This document shows positions 2,239-8,746 of a stretch of 15,699 bases of DNA, one piece after another (positions within the stretch are counted from its first letter, which is position 1; each line of letters starts with the position of its first letter). Position numbers and translations under genes: made by a program. The DNA lies in the IMG/VR virus record IMGVR_UViG_3300017469_000161, positions 1-15,699 of that record; one strand, written 5' to 3'. The notes under the pieces were generated by a model. The model saw nothing but the letters and a program-made list of their open reading frames with translations, was not told where the DNA came from and ran no database searches.

Positions 2239-4002
2239 ATGCAATTACAAGAACAACAAGGAACGAACAGTGAAAATTTGTCGTCTTCTGCCGATGTTTC
2301 TACTGTTGCTAGGCGTTTGAAGGACGAGTTAGATAAATACGTTGTCGGAAATGAAGACGTCAAAACAGCTGTTATAACAGGACTTTTGACAGGGTTTCCT
2401 ACTCTGCTCATCGGAGACCCAGGTACTGCAAAAACGTATACTATCGAAATCCTTTCGAAAATGATCGATGGGGTTAAACCAGAAGAGCTTTTCATAGTAC
2501 TCGCTCACGAGGCAATGACACCAGAAGACATTTTTGGAAATACAAACCTAAAAAAATTGAGAGAAGAAGGAGTACTAGAATATATTACCGAAGGCTTCTT
2601 GCCTTCTGCTAAACTAGTCTTCATAGATGAGATTTTCAAGAGCAACAAAGTCCTTGCCGAATCGTTGTTTAGAGCGATCAACGAAAAGAAGTTCAGAAAT
2701 GGAAGTAAAGAGGTCTCGTTACCGTGGCTAGCGTTCTTTTCTGCGTCAAACGAGGTCAGGGTAAATACTCAAGCGGACAGAGCATTCCTCGATAGGTTCA
2801 AGGTATTTGCTACAGTTCTTTCGCCTAACTTGGAAGACGTGCAAAACCTCAGCTCAACCGCAGAAAGGTATCATAAAGTTCTTACAGCAACTAAGCCGAG
2901 TTCCATCCCAACTGTAACGAGTTATGACGAAGTTAAAAAAATACAGGAGAAAATTCTTTCAGATTACATCAAATACACAACGCAAGATATTGTACTCGAA
3001 GCGGTGAAGCAGGCTAATCTCATCCTAGGTGCAATAGCACAGGCTTTGCAAAACCCAAGAGCGTTTAGCGATTCTGGCATTGTCAGGTCGTACTTCAGAT
3101 CGATGGGCGGATATCTGACAATCAGCGAGAGAAAATTCAAAAGTATAATACAAGTCGCCAACGCGTTACGTGATATGTTCGGCAATTCAACAATTACACC
3201 AGTGCATACTGCATTAGCATTCTATCTTACAATCCCGTTCACACCAGAGCTAAAGAATATAGTATCTTCTCTAGTCCCGACATTGATCAAATCATATTTC
3301 AACACAACTGGATCGAATAATTCTTCTAATAATTCTTCTATTGATATTGCTAGCTCGCTAGATAGCATTTCTAAAATACCAGAGAAAATATTGAGGGACA
3401 AAAACCTAAATGATTTGTTAGTCAAAGCGTCGGCATACGCTGTAGATGTTATTGCTAAAAATTTTCCAGCGACGTCGCCCGAGTTAGCACAATATAAAGC
3501 AGATCTTGTTACGAAATTTTCTGAGGTAGCGAATAATAGTGATGACATACAACAGAAGCTGGCTAATTTTAAGAAAGCTGTAGGTATCCTGGTCGATATT
3601 GAAACCAAGTATGCCAGTAATACTAAAATTAAAACTTTAGCACAGAAACTGGTTCAAAATATTGTATCTACTGTCTCCAAGCAGATAGATGTAAATCGTA
3701 TAACCTCTGATGCGATGGATGAGCTTCAGAAAACTTATGAGAAGATAAAAGCTGAAATTGAAAGTAAATATAACGAACTAATGAAACTAGGAGGGAGCGA
3801 CGAGAACAGCAAACTCATCTCGGGGATACGAAAATTCTTCCCGCAATTTTCGGACGCATTACCAGAAGCAGTGGTAGCCCAAGAGCAAAAAGAAGTGATA
3901 ATGAAGCGTCTTAACATTGCTGTAAGGTGGGCGAAGAGTAAGATACTAGATTTCACAAACACATTAAATGAACTTTCACAACTGGCACAAGTGACGAAGT
4001 GA
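2239..4002 (+). CDS. MoxR/RavA-family AAA+ ATPase with helical/coiled-coil C-terminus (ATV p618-like)
   Basis: Walker A GDPGTAKT, Walker B VFIDEIFK, ASNE sensor-1, AFLDRF Arg-finger, MoxR-type N-terminal VVGNEDV..AV..GLL.G; directly followed by a VWA gene with GTGA overlap. ATG 2239 fits TATA spacing; ATG 2230 is the alternative. Confidence 0.92.
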   Translation: MQLQEQQGTNSENLSSSADVSTVARRLKDELDKYVVGNEDVKTAVITGLLTGFPTLLIGDPGTAKTYTIEILSKMIDGVKPEELFIVLAHEAMTPEDIFGNTNLKKLREEGVLEYITEGFLPSAKLVFIDEIFKSNKVLAESLFRAINEKKFRNGSKEVSLPWLAFFSASNEVRVNTQADRAFLDRFKVFATVLSPNLEDVQNLSSTAERYHKVLTATKPSSIPTVTSYDEVKKIQEKILSDYIKYTTQDIVLEAVKQANLILGAIAQALQNPRAFSDSGIVRSYFRSMGGYLTISERKFKSIIQVANALRDMFGNSTITPVHTALAFYLTIPFTPELKNIVSSLVPTLIKSYFNTTGSNNSSNNSSIDIASSLDSISKIPEKILRDKNLNDLLVKASAYAVDVIAKNFPATSPELAQYKADLVTKFSEVANNSDDIQQKLANFKKAVGILVDIETKYASNTKIKTLAQKLVQNIVSTVSKQIDVNRITSDAMDELQKTYEKIKAEIESKYNELMKLGGSDENSKLISGIRKFFPQFSDALPEAVVAQEQKEVIMKRLNIAVRWAKSKILDFTNTLNELSQLAQVTK

Positions 4003-5723
4003 GTATCATGCAAAGCTTCTTTCATGATAATGAAGATGATGAGAGAGAACTAACTAAACTAACAAACACTATTTTCGAAACACTGATAAATGATTCTGTA
4101 CGTTGGTCTGGATATCTTTCACTTCCACCAGACGTTATGGATAGTTTAAGAGATACTGTATATAAACTTGTCAAGATAGCATCACAACAAAACAAACTTC
4201 TTTTGCAATTCCCAGCAGTCCTCGCTTACTTTGTTTATAATTTTTTAAAAAATATCGATTTAGATAGAATAAAGGACATAAACGAAAAATTAAACAATAT
4301 TCAGCGTCTGATACAACGTAAAAACTTGCAAGGCTTATCATTCAGCACTATCAAACAGATGTTACAACAGGAATTACAGGAGAAAAAGTTCAGACGCAAC
4401 AGACCCAACAAAGGAGAAAAACAACAAGAACAGCAGAAACAAAGCGGAAAAAGACCCAACAAAGGAGAACAACAAGAAGGTGAAGAAGGAAACCAAGGAG
4501 AAGAAACACAACAAGGAGGAGAAGAAGGTGAGGGACAACAAAGTGGAGAAGAAGGTAACCAAGAGGAGGGAGAAGAAGGGGAGACACAAGAAGGTGAAGG
4601 AGAACAGCAAAGTGGAGAAGGGAACGAAGGAGAACAGGGCAATGCCCAAGAAGGACAGGAATCAGAAGGAGAAAGAGGAAATGAAGAGAGTCAAAGCGGA
4701 GAAGAAGGTGGAGAACAAGGAGAGGAATTAGGATTAGGAGAAGAAGGGCAAGAAAGCGGAGAAGAAGGACAAAACATGAATCAAGAGGGTGAGGAGCAAC
4801 AAGGAGAGGAATCAGAAGGTGAAGGTGGAGGGGAACAAGGAGAGGAATTAGGAGAGGGAGGACAGGAAAACGAAGGGCAAAATAGTGAGGAACAGGAAGG
4901 AGAGGAAAGTGAACAAGGAGGAGAACAAGGAAATGAAAACGAAGAGAAACAAAGTGGAGAAGAAAGCGGAGAAGGTCAGAATGGCGAACAAGGGGAAGAA
5001 AGCCAGGAGGGTAACGAGCAGGAAAATGAGAAACAAAGCGGAACTGAAGGGAATGAAGGAGAAGAGGGAGAAGAAGAGAGTCAAAGCGGAGAAGAAGGGG
5101 GAACGCAGGAAGGAGAAAGAGAGGGTGGGGAACAAGAATCAGGAGAAGGACAAGAAGGTGAAATCGAAGGAAATCAAGAGGAGGGAGAGGAAGGAGAACC
5201 GCAAGAAGGTGAAGGAGAGGGAGAAGGACAGAGTGGAGAAGAAGGTAACCAAGGTCAAAGCGGAGAAGAAGAGGGACAGCAAGGTGAAAGCGAAGAAAAT
5301 CAGGGTCAAAATAGTGAACAAGAATCAGAAGGTGGAGAAGGACAGGAAATCGAAGATGTTACAGAAGACCTCGAAAATAGCATAGATGAAGAATCAAGAA
5401 TTTTAGATGAATTGCAAGAAAGCCTTCAAGAGTCCGTATCGGCTTTATCTATTGGGAAAGGCTCAGGAGGAGGAATATTAAAGGATATCAATCCTAGAGT
5501 TTTAGAATTATTAGAGAGAGCTAACAGGGTTTTGGCTTTGGCTAATCAAGTTGATTTACAGTACGCTAACAGAGGCGTTAAAGATCAGGGAGGGGTGATG
5601 AAGGGAATAACGACTGGAAATAATGTCAAACATATGTTTAAGAGCCAACTAGTTTTACCAGATGAAATTTTCCTCGAACGGTATACAAATAGAGCTGATG
5701 AAGGGAATAACAACTGGAAATAA
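3999..5723 (+). CDS. N-terminal part of VWA-domain partner of the MoxR ATPase (ATV p892-like), with about 320-aa Glu/Gly/Gln-rich linker; truncated by a frameshifting duplication
   Basis: GTG start overlaps the ATPase stop; helical N-domain, long acidic low-complexity tract, then GITTGNNVKHMFKSQLVLPDEIF, resembling the pre-VWA segment of ViaA/CoxE-like proteins. Goes out of frame at the 5695/5696 duplication junction. Confidence 0.8.
   Translation: MSIMQSFFHDNEDDERELTKLTNTIFETLINDSVRWSGYLSLPPDVMDSLRDTVYKLVKIASQQNKLLLQFPAVLAYFVYNFLKNIDLDRIKDINEKLNNIQRLIQRKNLQGLSFSTIKQMLQQELQEKKFRRNRPNKGEKQQEQQKQSGKRPNKGEQQEGEEGNQGEETQQGGEEGEGQQSGEEGNQEEGEEGETQEGEGEQQSGEGNEGEQGNAQEGQESEGERGNEESQSGEEGGEQGEELGLGEEGQESGEEGQNMNQEGEEQQGEESEGEGGGEQGEELGEGGQENEGQNSEEQEGEESEQGGEQGNENEEKQSGEESGEGQNGEQGEESQEGNEQENEKQSGTEGNEGEEGEEESQSGEEGGTQEGEREGGEQESGEGQEGEIEGNQEEGEEGEPQEGEGEGEGQSGEEGNQGQSGEEEGQQGESEENQGQNSEQESEGGEGQEIEDVTEDLENSIDEESRILDELQESLQESVSALSIGKGSGGGILKDINPRVLELLERANRVLALANQVDLQYANRGVKDQGGVMKGITTGNNVKHMFKSQLVLPDEIFLERYTNRADEGNNNWK
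4401..5350 (+). repeat. Purine-rich degenerate coding repeats (QSGEEG/QEGE/GEQGEE units; AGACCCAACAAAGGAGAA twice at 4401-4418 and 4452-4469)
   Basis: Directly visible recurring units such as CAAAGCGGAGAAGAAG and CAAGGAGAGGAAT on an A/G-dominated plus strand. Confidence 0.85.
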
Positions 5724-5795
5724 TGTCAAACATATGTTTAAGAGCCAACTAGTTTTACCAGATGAGATTTTCCTCGAACGGTATACAAATAGAGC
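5596..5795 (+). repeat. Tandem duplication of exactly 100 bp (5596-5695 / 5696-5795), 2 mismatches
   Basis: TGATGAAGGGAATAAC...GTATACAAATAGAGC occurs twice; differences are G5612/A5712 and A5666/G5766. Confidence 0.97.
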
Positions 5796-6348
5796 CTTAC
5801 TGCAAAGAGCGGTAGAAAATGAGGGCGTTGGGGACTTATATTTCATGATAGATAAAAGCGGGTCTATGGGAGCTCCTATGCCGAACGGGTACACGGCGTT
5901 TGAAAACGTTTCCGCTGTAGCCTTAGCTTCTGCTATGGAAGTAGAAAAGAATAGTAAGAAGGTGTTTGTGCAATACTTCGATACTTCGTCAACGGAGCCT
6001 CTGGATGTTAACAACGTTTTCGAAGTAGCTCAGACCACACCTGGAGGAGGAACGAACATGATGGTTGCATTACGAGACTTCATGGAATATTATAATAACT
6101 ATCCAGGGTTAAAGGACATAAAACAGATCTTCATACTATCTGATTTTGAGACGGATTATGATACTACGCTTTATTATTTCAAGAACTTTGCCAGAAATAA
6201 TGGCTTAGTAGTTACGTGCATACATGTATATAATGATGAAGTGCCTGCCGGTATGCAATCCATAATAGACGAACTCTGTGATGAATATTATAAATTTAAT
6301 AATTATGACGCCAGCGAATTATTTTCAGTCGTGTATTCGAAGCTTTAG
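5698..6348 (+). CDS. C-terminal VWA (von Willebrand A) domain portion of the split MoxR partner gene
   Basis: MIDAS motif YFMIDKSGSM (DxSxS), PGGGTN (T), FILSDF (D). The frame is open from 5662; it joins the 3999 ORF in frame if one 100-bp copy is removed (2250 nt, 749 aa). Confidence 0.88.
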   Translation: MKGITTGNNVKHMFKSQLVLPDEIFLERYTNRALLQRAVENEGVGDLYFMIDKSGSMGAPMPNGYTAFENVSAVALASAMEVEKNSKKVFVQYFDTSSTEPLDVNNVFEVAQTTPGGGTNMMVALRDFMEYYNNYPGLKDIKQIFILSDFETDYDTTLYYFKNFARNNGLVVTCIHVYNDEVPAGMQSIIDELCDEYYKFNNYDASELFSVVYSKL

Positions 6349-6382: not shown

Positions 6383-6742
6383 ATGAAATATTACGAAGTT
6401 AATGTGAGGACGTATTTGCCGGAGCCGGTCGCAGAATATTTCGTAAACTGCTTTTCACTAAAATTGCCGAACAAGTATTATGAGGTCGGTGATGTAATAA
6501 CATTTAGAGATGAGGAGAAAAAGGTAAGCGTCAATGTGCCAACAGAGCAAGTTAGAGGCATTACAGACGCATTACTGGCGTCTGCGTTAGATTTTTATAT
6601 AGCTCTCGCCGTTTGCACCGACAACAATATTTTGCTATACCGTATGATAAAAAAGGCGAGAGCAAAAGTAAAGGAAATGCTAAAAATAGATAATATAAAC
6701 CTCGACCCTGAGTTTCCAATCTGTCTAAAAGGTGGTAAATGA
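6383..6742 (+). CDS. Hypothetical protein, 119 aa
   Basis: ATG about 24 bp after TTTTTAAT (about 6352-6359), consistent with a leaderless transcript; its stop overlaps the next start (ATGA). Confidence 0.8.
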   Translation: MKYYEVNVRTYLPEPVAEYFVNCFSLKLPNKYYEVGDVITFRDEEKKVSVNVPTEQVRGITDALLASALDFYIALAVCTDNNILLYRMIKKARAKVKEMLKIDNINLDPEFPICLKGGK

Positions 6743-7185
6743 TGCAACATGAACTTACACCGTCTGATATGATCGCACTAATCTCTGAAGCTTTAGGGGA
6801 AAAAGATGAGGAGGGCGACCCAGAGACCTTGATAAAACTATTACTACGCGACGATTTGCCTAAACAAACGAGGTTAATTATTCTTAACTGTATCGTGAAA
6901 AACTGCGGGTTGCAGACAAGTTTATCAATATTAGATCCATTTATTCCCATAGAGGAAATACAATCAATAGAGACGTTGAAAATCGAGGGGACGAAAATAC
7001 TTGCGTGCATTAATTATACAAAAGTTAGAGATTGTTATTTGATAATTTTAGCGAATAGACAGTTCCATATAAAAAGAGTAACTAATCCTGCCGAATTATT
7101 ACAGAAGGTGAAGCAACAGCAAGGAGGAGGAAAGAAACAAAGCAAGGATATTATTTTAAGTAAGCTCGGAGGTGAGGATCTCTGA
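6739..7185 (+). CDS. Hypothetical protein, 148 aa
   Basis: ATGA overlap with the upstream gene, GGTGG RBS, co-oriented in a probable operon with the downstream ATPase. Confidence 0.8.
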   Translation: MMQHELTPSDMIALISEALGEKDEEGDPETLIKLLLRDDLPKQTRLIILNCIVKNCGLQTSLSILDPFIPIEEIQSIETLKIEGTKILACINYTKVRDCYLIILANRQFHIKRVTNPAELLQKVKQQQGGGKKQSKDIILSKLGGEDL

Positions 7186-7223
7186 CGGCTCCCCGCCCTA
7201 AAGGGCGAGGGTTCATAAGACGG
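7182..7223 (-). mobile_element. IS200/IS605-family end-like palindromic remnant flanked by 11-bp direct repeat GGTGAGGATCT (7171-7181, 7224-7234)
   Basis: Minus strand reads GAACCCTCGCCC-TTTA-GGGCGGGGAGCCGTCAG, a GC-rich hairpin ending in TCAG that resembles, from memory, right ends of Sulfolobales tnpB elements. No transposase gene nearby. Confidence 0.6.
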
Positions 7224-7234
7224 GGTGAGGATCT

Positions 7235-8746
7235 GTGATATGCGAAGTCGTTGCCAGTTCATTTAAGCCACGTGACGGTGACGTTGTGAACGCTGACATA
7301 ACAAACATACGTTTTGCGTATCCACCGAGCTGTATCTTCTCGTCTCAGTACACGCAATTCATTTATGTTGATCATCCTTTGCCGAAGATAAGCCGTCTAA
7401 GGTTTAAGAGAGAGAATGGGGAAGAAGTGAAGGACGACAATTACGTCGTAATAGATATTGGAGACGATTTCTTAGTTTTACCAATAGAAGTTTGGAATAA
7501 ACTGAAGGAGCTTATATCGACTTACCTTAGTGAAGGAACTTTGCACGGAGGCATCCTATTGTACGGCGTCCCAGGCACCGGTAAATCATACATTGCTACT
7601 AAATTACTTACAAGGATTCTGGGGTTGAAAGCAATTGTTAAGCAACCTACCGATTTCTTAACAAAATATGTCGGTGAACCTTACCAATTGCTAAACGATT
7701 TCATAAATAGACAACTATTTTCCAACAAACCTTCCATCATAGTTTTTGACGAGGGAGAAAGGCTTTTACTAAAAAGAGGTGGAGGGGGCGAAGCTGAAAA
7801 ATTGGTAGAGGACAATATGAAGAATATATTATTAGAAAAATTGCAGGAATTTGCGGATTCGCAATATCCTTCGATTCTCGCATTAACTACTAACGCTTCA
7901 ATAAACGATATGGACGACGCAATGCTGAGGAGGTTTCCCTGGAAAATTTATTTCCCTCCCTATTCGCACACCGTTTACGAGTACATAGCGAGGAAGATAA
8001 CTACACAAAGAACTTTCAAAATTGAGGATAAGGAATATGATGTGCAGAAACTATCGTTTTATGCATCTGCTACCGGGATTTCTGTAGCTGAGTTCAGGAC
8101 TATAGTACAGACTGGGACTATCTCTTTTCTCAGGTCAAAAAGTAACTTCCCGAGGAGACTTGTGCCATTCGAATTACAAGATAAGGAAAGTATTTTAGAT
8201 ATAACGAAATTGCCCCAACTCAGGCGTTTTGATATCAAAAATAAGAACGTAAAAATGTTATGCGAAGGAGCATTATATACTATGACTGCAGTAGTAACAA
8301 GCTATTTTCTTACAAGTGAGAATAGACCCGTTTACCTTATAGATTTACAAGAGTCCACTTCCTTGAGGTATGGAAGCGATGATATTATTACATTACTCAA
8401 GCAGGAAAACAAACCTGTCGGTATAATTCATATGCATGGCAATCTCAACATCAACAAACAGCTGTTAATAGAGCGTCTACTCGAAGAGGATAACGTTAGT
8501 TTTGTGGTAATAACGAGTTTTGATAGTTCATTATTACAAGTACAAACATTGAAGCTTCTACCTAGGATTGATATAACACAATTGCCTGCAACTGACACAG
8601 ACATTTTGAAAAAAATATTGTACACGGTAGACACATTTTACGGGCTGAAGTTGGACATGCAAAAAACTATGAACGAACTGTACAGGGAGATGGACTTTAG
8701 AAAAGCTATGGACGTGTTGGAGAAAATGATCGCCATGACAATCTAA
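7235..8746 (+). CDS. AAA+ ATPase (classical CDC48-like AAA domain), probably ATV p529-like
   Basis: GILLYGVPGTGKS Walker A, TKYVGE pore loop, IIVFDE Walker B, LTTN sensor-1, DDAMLRRF second region of homology; GGTGAGG RBS before the GTG start. Confidence 0.88.
   Translation: MICEVVASSFKPRDGDVVNADITNIRFAYPPSCIFSSQYTQFIYVDHPLPKISRLRFKRENGEEVKDDNYVVIDIGDDFLVLPIEVWNKLKELISTYLSEGTLHGGILLYGVPGTGKSYIATKLLTRILGLKAIVKQPTDFLTKYVGEPYQLLNDFINRQLFSNKPSIIVFDEGERLLLKRGGGGEAEKLVEDNMKNILLEKLQEFADSQYPSILALTTNASINDMDDAMLRRFPWKIYFPPYSHTVYEYIARKITTQRTFKIEDKEYDVQKLSFYASATGISVAEFRTIVQTGTISFLRSKSNFPRRLVPFELQDKESILDITKLPQLRRFDIKNKNVKMLCEGALYTMTAVVTSYFLTSENRPVYLIDLQESTSLRYGSDDIITLLKQENKPVGIIHMHGNLNINKQLLIERLLEEDNVSFVVITSFDSSLLQVQTLKLLPRIDITQLPATDTDILKKILYTVDTFYGLKLDMQKTMNELYREMDFRKAMDVLEKMIAMTI

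What the first reader, a model, noticed from the sequence alone, without database searches (positions are those of the whole stretch)
7171..7238. A harmless mini-insertion: IS-end hairpin with an 11-bp duplication that rebuilds both a stop codon and an RBS
Seen: GGTGAGGATCT-[CTGACGGCTCCCCGCCCTAAAGGGCGAGGGTTCATAAGACGG]-GGTGAGGATCT-GTGA. Deleting 7182-7234 gives GGT GAG GAT CTG TGA: the same GEDL-stop for the 148-aa gene, now overlapping the ATPase GTG start like other junctions in this window. In the present state the element supplies the stop and the duplicate supplies the RBS. Established: IS200/IS605 elements do not make target duplications. Inference: this is an excision/repair scar or a distinct tiny non-autonomous element, and it uncouples ATPase translation by placing a hairpin before its RBS.
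Basis: partly seen in the sequence, partly recalled or inferred. Interest (0 to 1): 0.6.

Follow-up and report, generated by a model that had tools for sequence, protein, structure and literature searches.

The report
Transposon-end remnant at a viral gene junction
A 42-43 bp leftover of the right end of an IS200/IS605-type transposon sits between two genes of a Sulfolobus spindle-shaped virus, flanked by a 10-11 bp duplication that keeps one gene's stop and the other's ribosome-binding site; it looks like an ordinary, decaying, sometimes-lost passenger, not a new kind of mobile element.

Summary
GGTGAGGATCT occurs at 7171-7181 and 7224-7234 around a 42-bp core. 38 of 39 related SMV-like records have the predicted empty site. 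One diverged contig (L141) carries the same insertion.

On the minus strand, 33 nt of the core (7182-7214) are identical to the right-end (RE) terminus of an IS200/IS605-type family. That family is abundant in Sulfolobales, mostly as ~235-bp MITE/PATE-like elements, and inserts after TCAC. The other 9 nt (7215-7223) have no identified source.

Both junctions lie where TnpA would cut. The left flank ends in TCAC. The RE ends in GTCAG.

The "target duplication" is the 10-nt interval between two TCAC motifs (GTGA on the plus strand: one in the Shine-Dalgarno sequence, one at the stop/start overlap), plus one ambiguous base. It is therefore not a transposase-made duplication. It is unique among 172 hairpin copies examined.

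The likeliest origin is a slippage tandem duplication followed by a canonical insertion. Recombination between two neighbouring insertion alleles is the main rival.

The hairpin is decaying in L141. A near-identical genome (L202) has lost the 53 bp and keeps a 1-nt scar that turns the ATPase start GTG into CTG. This is a known kind of element with a neat local history, of modest interest.

The parts
6739..7185 (+). 148-aa ORF with no Pfam family. Its last codons (GGT GAG GAT CTC TGA) span repeat copy 1 and the first bases of the insertion.
   Evidence: Orthologues of 145-150 aa are present in all SMV-like relatives.
7171..7181 (+). Repeat copy 1 (GGTGAGGATCT). It holds the first GTGA (7172-7175), which reads TCAC on the minus strand. 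It keeps the ancestral C-terminus G-E-D-L.
   Evidence: It is identical in L141.
7183..7185 (+). TGA stop of the 148-aa ORF. It is supplied by the terminal CTGAC of the inserted transposon end.
7182..7214 (-). 33 nt identical to the right-end (RE) terminus of a Sulfolobales IS200/IS605-type family. On the minus strand the order is GAAC, the hairpin, then AGCCGTCAG. The transposon end is at 7182.
   Evidence: The exact 33-mer lies at the end of omega-RNA-like scaffolds in two Sulfolobales genomes. Metagenome contigs match the window only across 7182-7214 and then continue as that scaffold (table 7).
7191..7211 (.). Imperfect hairpin. On the minus strand it reads CCTCGCCC, loop TTTA, GGGCGGGG. 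It is the conserved subterminal hairpin of this transposon family.
   Evidence: The same 20-mer is present at the ends of the SMV1 IS200/IS605 element and in 120+ archaeal and bacterial loci.
7215..7223 (-). 9 nt (minus strand CCGTCTTAT) that are not RE-derived. They may be what is left of a left-end arm. Their origin is unknown.
   Evidence: Homology of community IS copies stops at 7214. The 9 nt were not found next to a hairpin in 301 Sulfolobales genomes. The window holds no local template.
7224..7234 (+). Repeat copy 2 (GGTGAGGATCT). It serves as the Shine-Dalgarno-like site 5-11 nt before the ATPase start and holds the second GTGA (7225-7228, TCAC on the minus strand). If cleavage is right after TCAC, the element spans 7182-7224 (43 nt) and the true repeat is 10 nt (7172-7181 and 7225-7234).
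   Evidence: TCAC lies 9-17 nt upstream of the left-end hairpin in 10 of 13 MITE copies of this family.
7235..7238 (+). GTGA: the ATPase GTG start followed by A. This was the ancestral stop/start overlap. On the minus strand it is the other TCAC target motif.
7235..8746 (+). 503-aa AAA+ ATPase gene.
   Evidence: Pfam PF00004 at E 1.4e-18. Annotated as 'conserved archaeal viral AAA-ATPase' in SMV1.

Best explanation
The window is a fragment of a Sulfolobus monocaudavirus (SMV1)-like virus. The 42-43 bp between the repeats are an immobile remnant of an IS200/IS605-family element (TnpA/TnpB type, "peel-and-paste") that lies on the minus strand.

What is shown:
- 33 nt are the exact RE terminus of a family that is common in Sulfolobales, mostly as ~235-bp MITE/PATE-like copies.
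- The remaining 9-10 nt occupy the position of a left-end arm.
- The left junction follows TCAC, the family's target motif. The right junction is the canonical RE end (GTCAG).
- The flanking repeat is exactly the 10-nt interval between two neighbouring TCAC motifs of the empty site, plus one ambiguous C. On the plus strand these motifs are the GTGA inside the Shine-Dalgarno sequence and the GTGA of the stop/start overlap.

What is inferred:
- The likeliest history has two ordinary steps. First, a slippage tandem duplication of that 10-nt unit, primed by the TCAC/TCAC microhomology. This would be nearly neutral, because the upstream ORF still ends G-E-D-L-stop and the ATPase keeps a ribosome-binding site and start. 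Second, a canonical insertion without duplication at the middle TCAC. This is the one position where an insertion damages neither gene.
- The inserted element was either already a mini, or a MITE that later collapsed to one hairpin.
- Today it is a passenger. The upstream ORF stops in the element's CTGAC. The ATPase is presumably initiated from the duplicated ribosome-binding site rather than by termination-reinitiation.
- The hairpin is under no visible selection, and the whole 53 bp can be lost by recombination between the repeats.
For: Identity of the core:
- The hairpin 20-mer lies at both ends of the SMV1 IS200/IS605 element and in 120+ loci across archaea and bacteria, with conserved RE-type flanks.
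- The RE arm AGCCGTCAG plus hairpin is multi-copy in 49 of 301 Sulfolobales genomes.
- The exact 33-mer is found in two genomes.
- Those copies are ~215-255-bp elements with a left-end hairpin, a scaffold and an RE hairpin. Most have no tnpB ORF.
- Rfam sot0042 and HgcC hit the SMV1 RE, and HgcC hits one such MITE copy.

Target motif:
- TCAC precedes 10 of 13 MITE left ends, and the other three differ by one base.
- TCAC precedes 5 of the single-hairpin copies seen in genomes.
- TCAC is a published TnpB transposon-adjacent motif (AmaTnpB, cited in bioRxiv 10.1101/2023.03.06.531077).

Geometry: read directly.

No target duplication as a family trait: among 172 hairpin copies only the window has a flanking repeat of 10 nt or more, and the rest match a random-pair control. 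PMC10055086 agrees.

Slippage precedent in this virus group: a 16-bp tandem repeat expands and contracts in SMV1a (PMC12199143).

Age and decay:
- L141 has the same insertion with 4 of 42 substitutions that break the stem, against 12 of 191 in the upstream flank.

Loss:
- L202 differs from L141/L201 at only 8 positions over 6.4 kb. It lacks the 53 bp and has CTGA at the junction.
- L141's flanks are closest to the empty L142.
Against: - Neither predicted intermediate was seen in the 39 relatives: no 10-bp tandem duplication without the element, and no longer MITE or IS at this site.
- The 4 nt next to the hairpin (GAAC) are RE-type rather than left-end-type. The remnant therefore cannot be a simple collapse between left-end and RE hairpins.
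- The 9 nt at 7215-7223 have no identified source.
- The two-step order cannot be told apart from rival routes to the same final sequence.
- The effect on ATPase translation is untested.
- The window is only 29% of a genome, so a full-length parent element elsewhere in this virus cannot be excluded.
Confidence: 0.7

Rival explanations
1. Two transposition events using the two neighbouring TCAC motifs produced the repeat. One version: separate insertions after each TCAC (for example a local hop between sister genomes) and homologous recombination inside the element joined the left flank of one allele to the right flank of the other. Another version: a TnpA side reaction cut at the next TCAC beyond the RE, carried 10 nt of flank along, and re-inserted the 53-nt unit after the other TCAC.
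For: It gives exactly the observed junctions: the left flank ends in TCAC number 2, and the right flank is what follows TCAC number 1. TCAC differs from the RE cleavage motif TCAG by one base. SMV-like genomes are clearly mosaic and recombining. The recombinant is the only arrangement that keeps both the ORF's C-terminus and the ATPase ribosome-binding site, so selection would favour it.
Against: It needs three events, or an undocumented TnpA side reaction. No single-site insertion allele was found among the 39 relatives. No other copy of the family shows such a repeat.
Confidence: 0.2
2. It is a repair or replication scar. A break or stalled fork at the junction was repaired by template switching that copied about 33 nt from an IS right end elsewhere, with fill-in of staggered ends creating the duplication. 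The break might have been made by TnpB.
For: The 9 nt of unknown origin and the RE-only content resemble templated-insertion scars. TnpB enzymes of Sulfolobus leave 5' overhangs.
Against: Both borders coincide with TnpA cleavage positions (RE terminus at 7182, TCAC on the other side), which random template switching would not give. A TnpB cut lies 15-28 nt from the transposon-adjacent motif, but the repeat occupies positions 1-10 after TCAC. The plus strand shown (from 6900) holds no TCAC upstream of the site.
Confidence: 0.07
3. It is a selected regulatory insertion. The hairpin was kept because it uncouples or tunes ATPase translation relative to the upstream gene, or acts as an RNA or DNA signal.
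For: It persists in two lineages about 6-7% apart. Both repeat copies are intact in both lineages.
Against: The stem is broken by 4 substitutions in L141. The insertion was lost in L202 and is absent from 38 of 39 relatives. There is no T-run terminator. Folding around the second ribosome-binding site is no better than shuffles (z +0.47). The conserved repeats are explained by their coding and ribosome-binding roles.
Confidence: 0.03

Closest known systems
IS200/IS605-family insertion sequences (TnpA Y1 transposase plus TnpB/omega-RNA), for example the element annotated in SMV1 (HG322870.1 25272-27062; called ISC1467 in PMC3839810)
   Same: Same subterminal hairpin. Same RE terminus (GTCAG, with the arm AGCCGTCAG in the Sulfolobales subfamily). 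Insertion 3' of a short motif (TCAC). The family makes no target duplication.
   Different: Only one hairpin, of RE type. There is no left-end hairpin and no tnpA or tnpB in the window. It is 42-43 bp instead of 1.3-1.9 kb. It is flanked by a 10-11-bp repeat.
PATE / MITE derivatives of IS200/IS605 (Haloquadratum PATEs, PMC3119063; Geobacillus PATE-like elements, PMC10055086; SMN1/SMN2 of Sulfolobus and SMV1, PMC3839810)
   Same: Non-coding derivative of the same transposon ends. The ~235-bp Sulfolobales copies found here are of this type and carry the identical RE.
   Different: PATEs and MITEs keep both ends and usually an omega-RNA scaffold, so TnpA can move them in trans. This remnant keeps only the last 33 nt of the RE and has no second copy.
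Single-hairpin 'solo' copies seen here in SMV1 (27132, 48377), SMV3 (22065) and Sulfolobales genomes (L159, L162, L171, L173, L182)
   Same: 41-45 bp: target motif, short arm, one hairpin, RE arm. They are intergenic and unannotated.
   Different: Those have a left-end-type arm next to the hairpin, as expected from deletion between the left-end and RE hairpins, and they have no flanking repeat. The window copy has an RE-type GAAC next to the hairpin and the 10-11-bp repeat.
REP elements and RAYT transposases of bacteria
   Same: Short imperfect palindromes related to IS200/IS605 ends. They are often intergenic.
   Different: REPs are high-copy and tied to a RAYT gene. Here there is a single copy, no RAYT was examined, and identity is to a TnpB-type RE.
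Slippage-driven short tandem repeats in SMV1a ('Sader', PMC12199143)
   Same: Rapid gain and loss of 10-16-bp repeat units in the same virus group. The loss of the 53 bp between repeats in L202 is the same kind of event.
   Different: Sader is a spacer-less tandem repeat with a phenotype. Here the two copies are separated by a transposon remnant.

Membership tests
IS200/IS605 family (as a derivative or remnant) | End sequence with the family's subterminal imperfect hairpin and the canonical terminus | tested here: met
   33/33 nt identity to RE termini in Sulfolobales genomes. The same hairpin is at the SMV1 IS ends. Community contigs break homology exactly at 7182.
IS200/IS605 family (as a derivative or remnant) | Insertion immediately 3' of the family's target / transposon-adjacent motif | tested here: met
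   The left flank on the minus strand ends in TCAC. TCAC precedes 10 of 13 MITE left ends of the same subfamily.
IS200/IS605 family (as a derivative or remnant) | No target-site duplication | tested here: inconclusive
   A 10-11-bp repeat is present. It equals the interval between two target motifs and is unique among 172 copies, so it is most likely not made by the transposase.
IS200/IS605 family (complete, autonomous element) | Both left-end and right-end hairpins, plus tnpA and/or tnpB | tested here: not met
   There is one hairpin only. PF01797 and PF07282 are absent from the window.
PATE / MITE of IS200/IS605 | Non-coding element that keeps both transposon ends and is present in several copies | tested here: not met
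   The left-end hairpin is missing. There is no other copy of the 3' arm or of the full core in viral contigs or in 301 Sulfolobales genomes.
REP / RAYT system | High-copy REP hairpins associated with a RAYT gene | not tested
   There is a single copy in the window. No RAYT search was made. Identity is to a TnpB-type RE.
Omega-RNA / sotRNA / HgcC RNA | Match to the RNA scaffold model | tested here: not met
   Rfam gave no hit in the window at E <= 0.1. The SMV1 RE hits sot0042 (E 7e-10) and HgcC, and the MITE L196 hits HgcC, all below gathering score. The window keeps only the last hairpin, and on the antisense strand of the viral genes.

The most novel reading that the evidence does not exclude
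The pseudo-duplication records an undescribed side reaction of IS200/IS605 transposition. In that reaction TnpA uses a neighbouring copy of its target motif as a surrogate end, transduces a few bases of flank, and so creates an apparent target duplication. Alternatively, single-hairpin 41-45-bp copies are a still-mobile, REP-like class in Sulfolobales and their viruses, rather than dead solo remnants.
Probability: 0.1. Interest if true: 0.6.

Novelty: new member of a known kind. Interest (0 to 1): 0.3.

Why it matters
The case shows at base-pair resolution how a transposon that makes no duplications can end up inside an apparent target duplication. It also shows that the GTGA of an archaeal Shine-Dalgarno site and of a stop/start overlap are themselves target motifs for a TCAC-specific IS200/IS605 family. 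Tightly packed viral gene junctions can therefore be natural landing sites.

It documents the full life of such an insertion in a natural virus population. The window holds an intact copy, L141 a decaying one, and L202 a lost one. L202 keeps a one-base scar that changes an essential-looking gene's start codon.

For annotation, unannotated 40-45-bp single-hairpin remnants of this family are common in Sulfolobales genomes and SMV genomes. They can serve as deletion endpoints, as in the loss of the IS from SMV1a.

None of this requires a new mechanism.

Tried and rejected
- **Other copies in viral contigs.** Exact scans for the window-specific 3' arm and for the RE arm found nothing. Three hits to a 16-mer were chance matches without a hairpin.
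- **Parent left end.** A search for the 9-10 nt next to a hairpin found no match in 301 Sulfolobales genomes. The window holds no local template.
- **TnpB-cut origin of the repeat.** Rejected on geometry. Cuts lie 15-28 nt from the transposon-adjacent motif, but the repeat occupies positions 1-10.
- **A DDE-type transposon that makes 11-bp duplications.** Rejected. There are no terminal inverted repeats, and both borders are TnpA-type.
- **Fold statistics.** The hairpin and the ribosome-binding-site context are not distinguishable from shuffles, so nothing is claimed from energy.
- **Rfam.** No hit in the window.
- **Read-level test of polymorphism.** Not possible. The runs found hold only about a quarter of the sampled words and are stored as contigs. 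They showed the empty allele and many IS right ends, but no read counts.
- **Alternative reading of the repeat as 15 bp.** In this reading the target already had CTGA and the window later reverted. Rejected as less parsimonious, because TCAG is part of the 9-nt RE arm in dozens of copies and CTG is seen only in L141 and L202.
Full report
**What the window is.** The 15,699-nt window is an IMG/VR contig estimated to be 29% complete. It is 72-86% identical at the DNA level to the Sulfolobus monocaudaviruses SMV1-SMV4. Around the finding it is collinear with them. The gene order is a VWA-like gene, a small membrane-protein gene, the 148-aa ORF (6739-7185, no Pfam family), then a 503-aa AAA+ ATPase (7235-8746, PF00004 at E 1.4e-18).

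**The observation.**
- GGTGAGGATCT stands at 7171-7181 and at 7224-7234, around 42 bp.
- The 148-aa ORF ends at TGA 7183-7185, inside the first bases of the insert. The ATPase starts at GTG 7235, 5-11 nt after the second repeat copy.
- In SMV1, SMV1a, SMV2, SMV3 and SMV4 the 53 bp are absent and the two genes overlap by ATGA.
- I examined 39 related records in all: 5 reference genomes, 8 further IMG/VR contigs and 26 further metagenome contigs. 38 have the empty site. Several of these (L142/L203, L229, L231) have exactly the sequence obtained by deleting 7182-7234.
- An 11-mer repeated within 100 bp is not unusual in this window by chance alone. The comparative evidence is what shows a real duplication.

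**What the core is.**
- The hairpin 20-mer lies at both ends of the IS200/IS605 element of SMV1, which carries OrfA and OrfB.
The loci come from Crenarchaeota, Thermococci, Archaeoglobi, Halobacteria and several bacterial phyla. The flanks are conserved in a way typical of a transposon right end.
- In the window the motif lies on the minus strand.
- Its particular RE arm (AGCCGTCAG after the hairpin) is multi-copy in 49 of 301 sampled Sulfolobales genomes.
- The 33 nt at 7182-7214 are identical to RE termini in two of those genomes.
- Most of those copies are not attached to a tnpB ORF. They are ~215-255-bp elements made of a left-end hairpin, a structured scaffold and the RE hairpin. This is the PATE/MITE type known for this family (PMC10055086; SMN2 in SMV1, PMC3839810).
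- Rfam's sot0042 and HgcC models hit the SMV1 RE, and HgcC hits one such MITE, all below gathering score. Nothing hits the window.
- Logan contigs from four hot-spring runs match the window only across 7182-7214 and then continue as that scaffold. This fixes the RE-derived part at 33 nt and the transposon terminus at 7182.
- The remaining 9 nt (7215-7223) were not found next to a hairpin in 301 Sulfolobales genomes or elsewhere in the window.
- The window has no tnpA or tnpB.

**The target motif and the repeat.**
- TCAC lies 9-17 nt upstream of the left-end hairpin in 10 of 13 MITE copies of this subfamily. The other three have one-base variants.
- Five single-hairpin copies in genomes also follow TCAC.
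- TCAC is a published TnpB transposon-adjacent motif (AmaTnpB, cited). TnpA and TnpB share that motif.
- On the minus strand the window reads as follows: TCAC, AGATCC, TCAC, then the element (C, CCGTCTTAT, GAAC, hairpin, AGCCGTCAG), then AGATCC, TCAC, C.
- So the left flank ends in a TCAC, as a canonical insertion should. The right flank is exactly what follows the other TCAC of the empty site.
- The repeat is therefore the 10-nt interval between two target motifs. The eleventh base is ambiguous, because both the element and the flank continue with C.
- On the plus strand the two motifs are GTGA: one inside the Shine-Dalgarno-like GGTGAGG, one at the GTGA stop/start overlap. Only relatives with a GTG start have both motifs.
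The rest are indistinguishable from randomly paired flanks.
- The family therefore makes no target duplications, as the literature states, and this repeat is a one-off.

**How the repeat arose (inference).** Three routes give the identical final sequence.
- Route 1: a slippage tandem duplication of the 10-nt unit between the TCAC microhomologies, then a canonical insertion at the middle TCAC.
- Route 2: two insertion alleles at the two TCACs, joined by recombination inside the element.
- Route 3: an aberrant TnpA reaction that cut at the next TCAC and carried the flank along.
- I favour route 1. It needs two ordinary events. The intermediate is nearly neutral, since the ORF still ends G-E-D-L-stop and the ATPase keeps its ribosome-binding site and start. 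Rapid slippage gain and loss of a 16-bp unit has been shown experimentally in SMV1a (PMC12199143).
- None of the intermediates was seen in the relatives, so this step remains open.
- A TnpB-cut origin is rejected. TnpB cuts 15-28 nt from the motif, and the repeat occupies positions 1-10.

**Why it is a remnant and not a mobile mini-element.**
- It has one hairpin. The 4 nt next to it (GAAC) are of the RE type. Left ends in this family have GAAG, GAGG or GAGA there.
- By analogy with IS608, where the bases 5' of each hairpin guide cleavage of the nearby tetranucleotide, GAAC would pair with the RE site TCAG and not with the left-end site TCAC. This mechanism is recalled from the literature and was not tested here.
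- Excision by TnpA is therefore unlikely.
- Single-hairpin copies of 41-45 bp are common: in SMV1 at 27132 and 48377, in SMV3 at 22065, and in several Sulfolobales genomes. All are intergenic and unannotated.
- Most of those have left-end-type arms, as expected if a MITE collapsed by recombination between its two identical hairpins.
- The window's copy must have collapsed slightly differently, or arrived truncated.

**History in the population.**
- L141 (IMGVR_UViG_3300005859_000281) carries the same insertion at the same place. It has 4 of 42 substitutions, which break the stem (-11.9 against -15.2 kcal/mol, with a different fold). Its upstream flank differs from the window at 12 of 191 positions.
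- The insertion is therefore old and drifts like neutral DNA. Both repeat copies stay intact, as expected from their coding and ribosome-binding roles.
- In L141 the base after the second copy is C rather than G. This extends the repeat to 15 bp and turns the ATPase start into CTG. The next in-frame common start is a GTG 17 codons downstream.
- L202 (OGCG01000146.1) differs from the L141 contig at 8 positions over 6.4 kb. It lacks the 53 bp and has CTGA at the junction.
- CTG occurs at this position only in these two records. All others have ATG, GTG or TTG.
- The simplest reading is a recent deletion between the 15-bp repeats of an L141-type genome, which left a one-base scar.
- L141's flanks are also closer to the empty L142 than to the window (3/191 against 12/191 upstream). 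This fits repeated loss or short-patch recombination.

**Function.**
- The ancestral 4-nt stop/start overlap is replaced by a 49-nt spacer that holds the hairpin and a second ribosome-binding site. Termination-reinitiation coupling is therefore presumably replaced by independent initiation.
- No tool here can measure that.
- Folding gives no sign that the second ribosome-binding site is sequestered. There is no T-run terminator.
- Decay in L141, loss in L202 and absence from 38 of 39 relatives all argue against a selected regulatory role.

**Verdict.**
- Three refinements apply. The core is specifically a right-end remnant of a TCAC-targeting IS200/IS605 subfamily. The "duplication" is the interval between two target motifs and not a transposase product. 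The insertion is not entirely without consequence in sister lineages.
- It is a member of a known kind with an instructive local history. Interest is modest.

Noticed in passing
window 5591-5790: A 100-bp tandem duplication (two copies, 96% identical) lies inside the VWA-like gene and splits it into ORFs 3999-5723 and 5662-6348. Removing one copy restores a single 749-aa ORF like the 759-aa SMV1 protein. The close relatives aligned (L201-L203) have one copy.
   Followed up: partly
window 2187, 5626, 5726, 9825, 12163, 14530: A 16-bp palindrome of the type TCAAACATATGTTTGA recurs, mostly at gene boundaries. The same motif lies next to the SMV1 IS left end and near the solo hairpins of SMV1 and SMV3. 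It is a candidate protein-binding or regulatory site.
   Followed up: no
window 986, 2362, 8455, 8789, 11240: A second recurring palindrome, AAACAGCTGTT, occurs in direct and inverted pairs (families D8/D18, I1/I7).
   Followed up: no
window 4400-5400: A long run of imperfect GAA/GGA-rich repeats (expected to code mainly for Glu, Gly and Gln) lies inside the 574-aa ORF.
   Followed up: no
L009 (SMV1 HG322870.1 24700-27500) and L002 (SMV1a): The IS200/IS605 element of SMV1 is preceded by an inverted single-hairpin copy and followed by a degenerate hairpin. The junction in SMV1a, which lacks the IS, lies within the 9-bp AGGGCGAGG shared by those two copies. The published loss of the IS therefore looks like recombination between hairpin copies (about 1.9 kb) and not seamless TnpA excision.
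   Followed up: partly
L137 (SMV1 48377-48396), L135 (SMV3 22065-22084): Unannotated intergenic single-hairpin elements of 44-45 bp: TGAT or TGAC, a 14-15-nt arm, the hairpin, then AGGAGGTCAG. They have no flanking repeats.
   Followed up: partly
L166 (G214:C2, around 138539): A hairpin copy that carries RE-type arms on both sides (CTGACCTCCT, hairpin, AGCCGTCAG). It is a palindromic double-end arrangement.
   Followed up: no
L201 versus L202, window-equivalent 6460-6953: These two records are otherwise identical, but 7 of their 8 differences cluster in this ~500 bp. This suggests a short recombination patch upstream of the junction.
   Followed up: no
L141 1997 and L202 junction: In these two records the ATPase gene has CTG where all other relatives have ATG, GTG or TTG. 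Either CTG is used as a start, or initiation moves to a GTG 17 codons downstream.
   Followed up: partly
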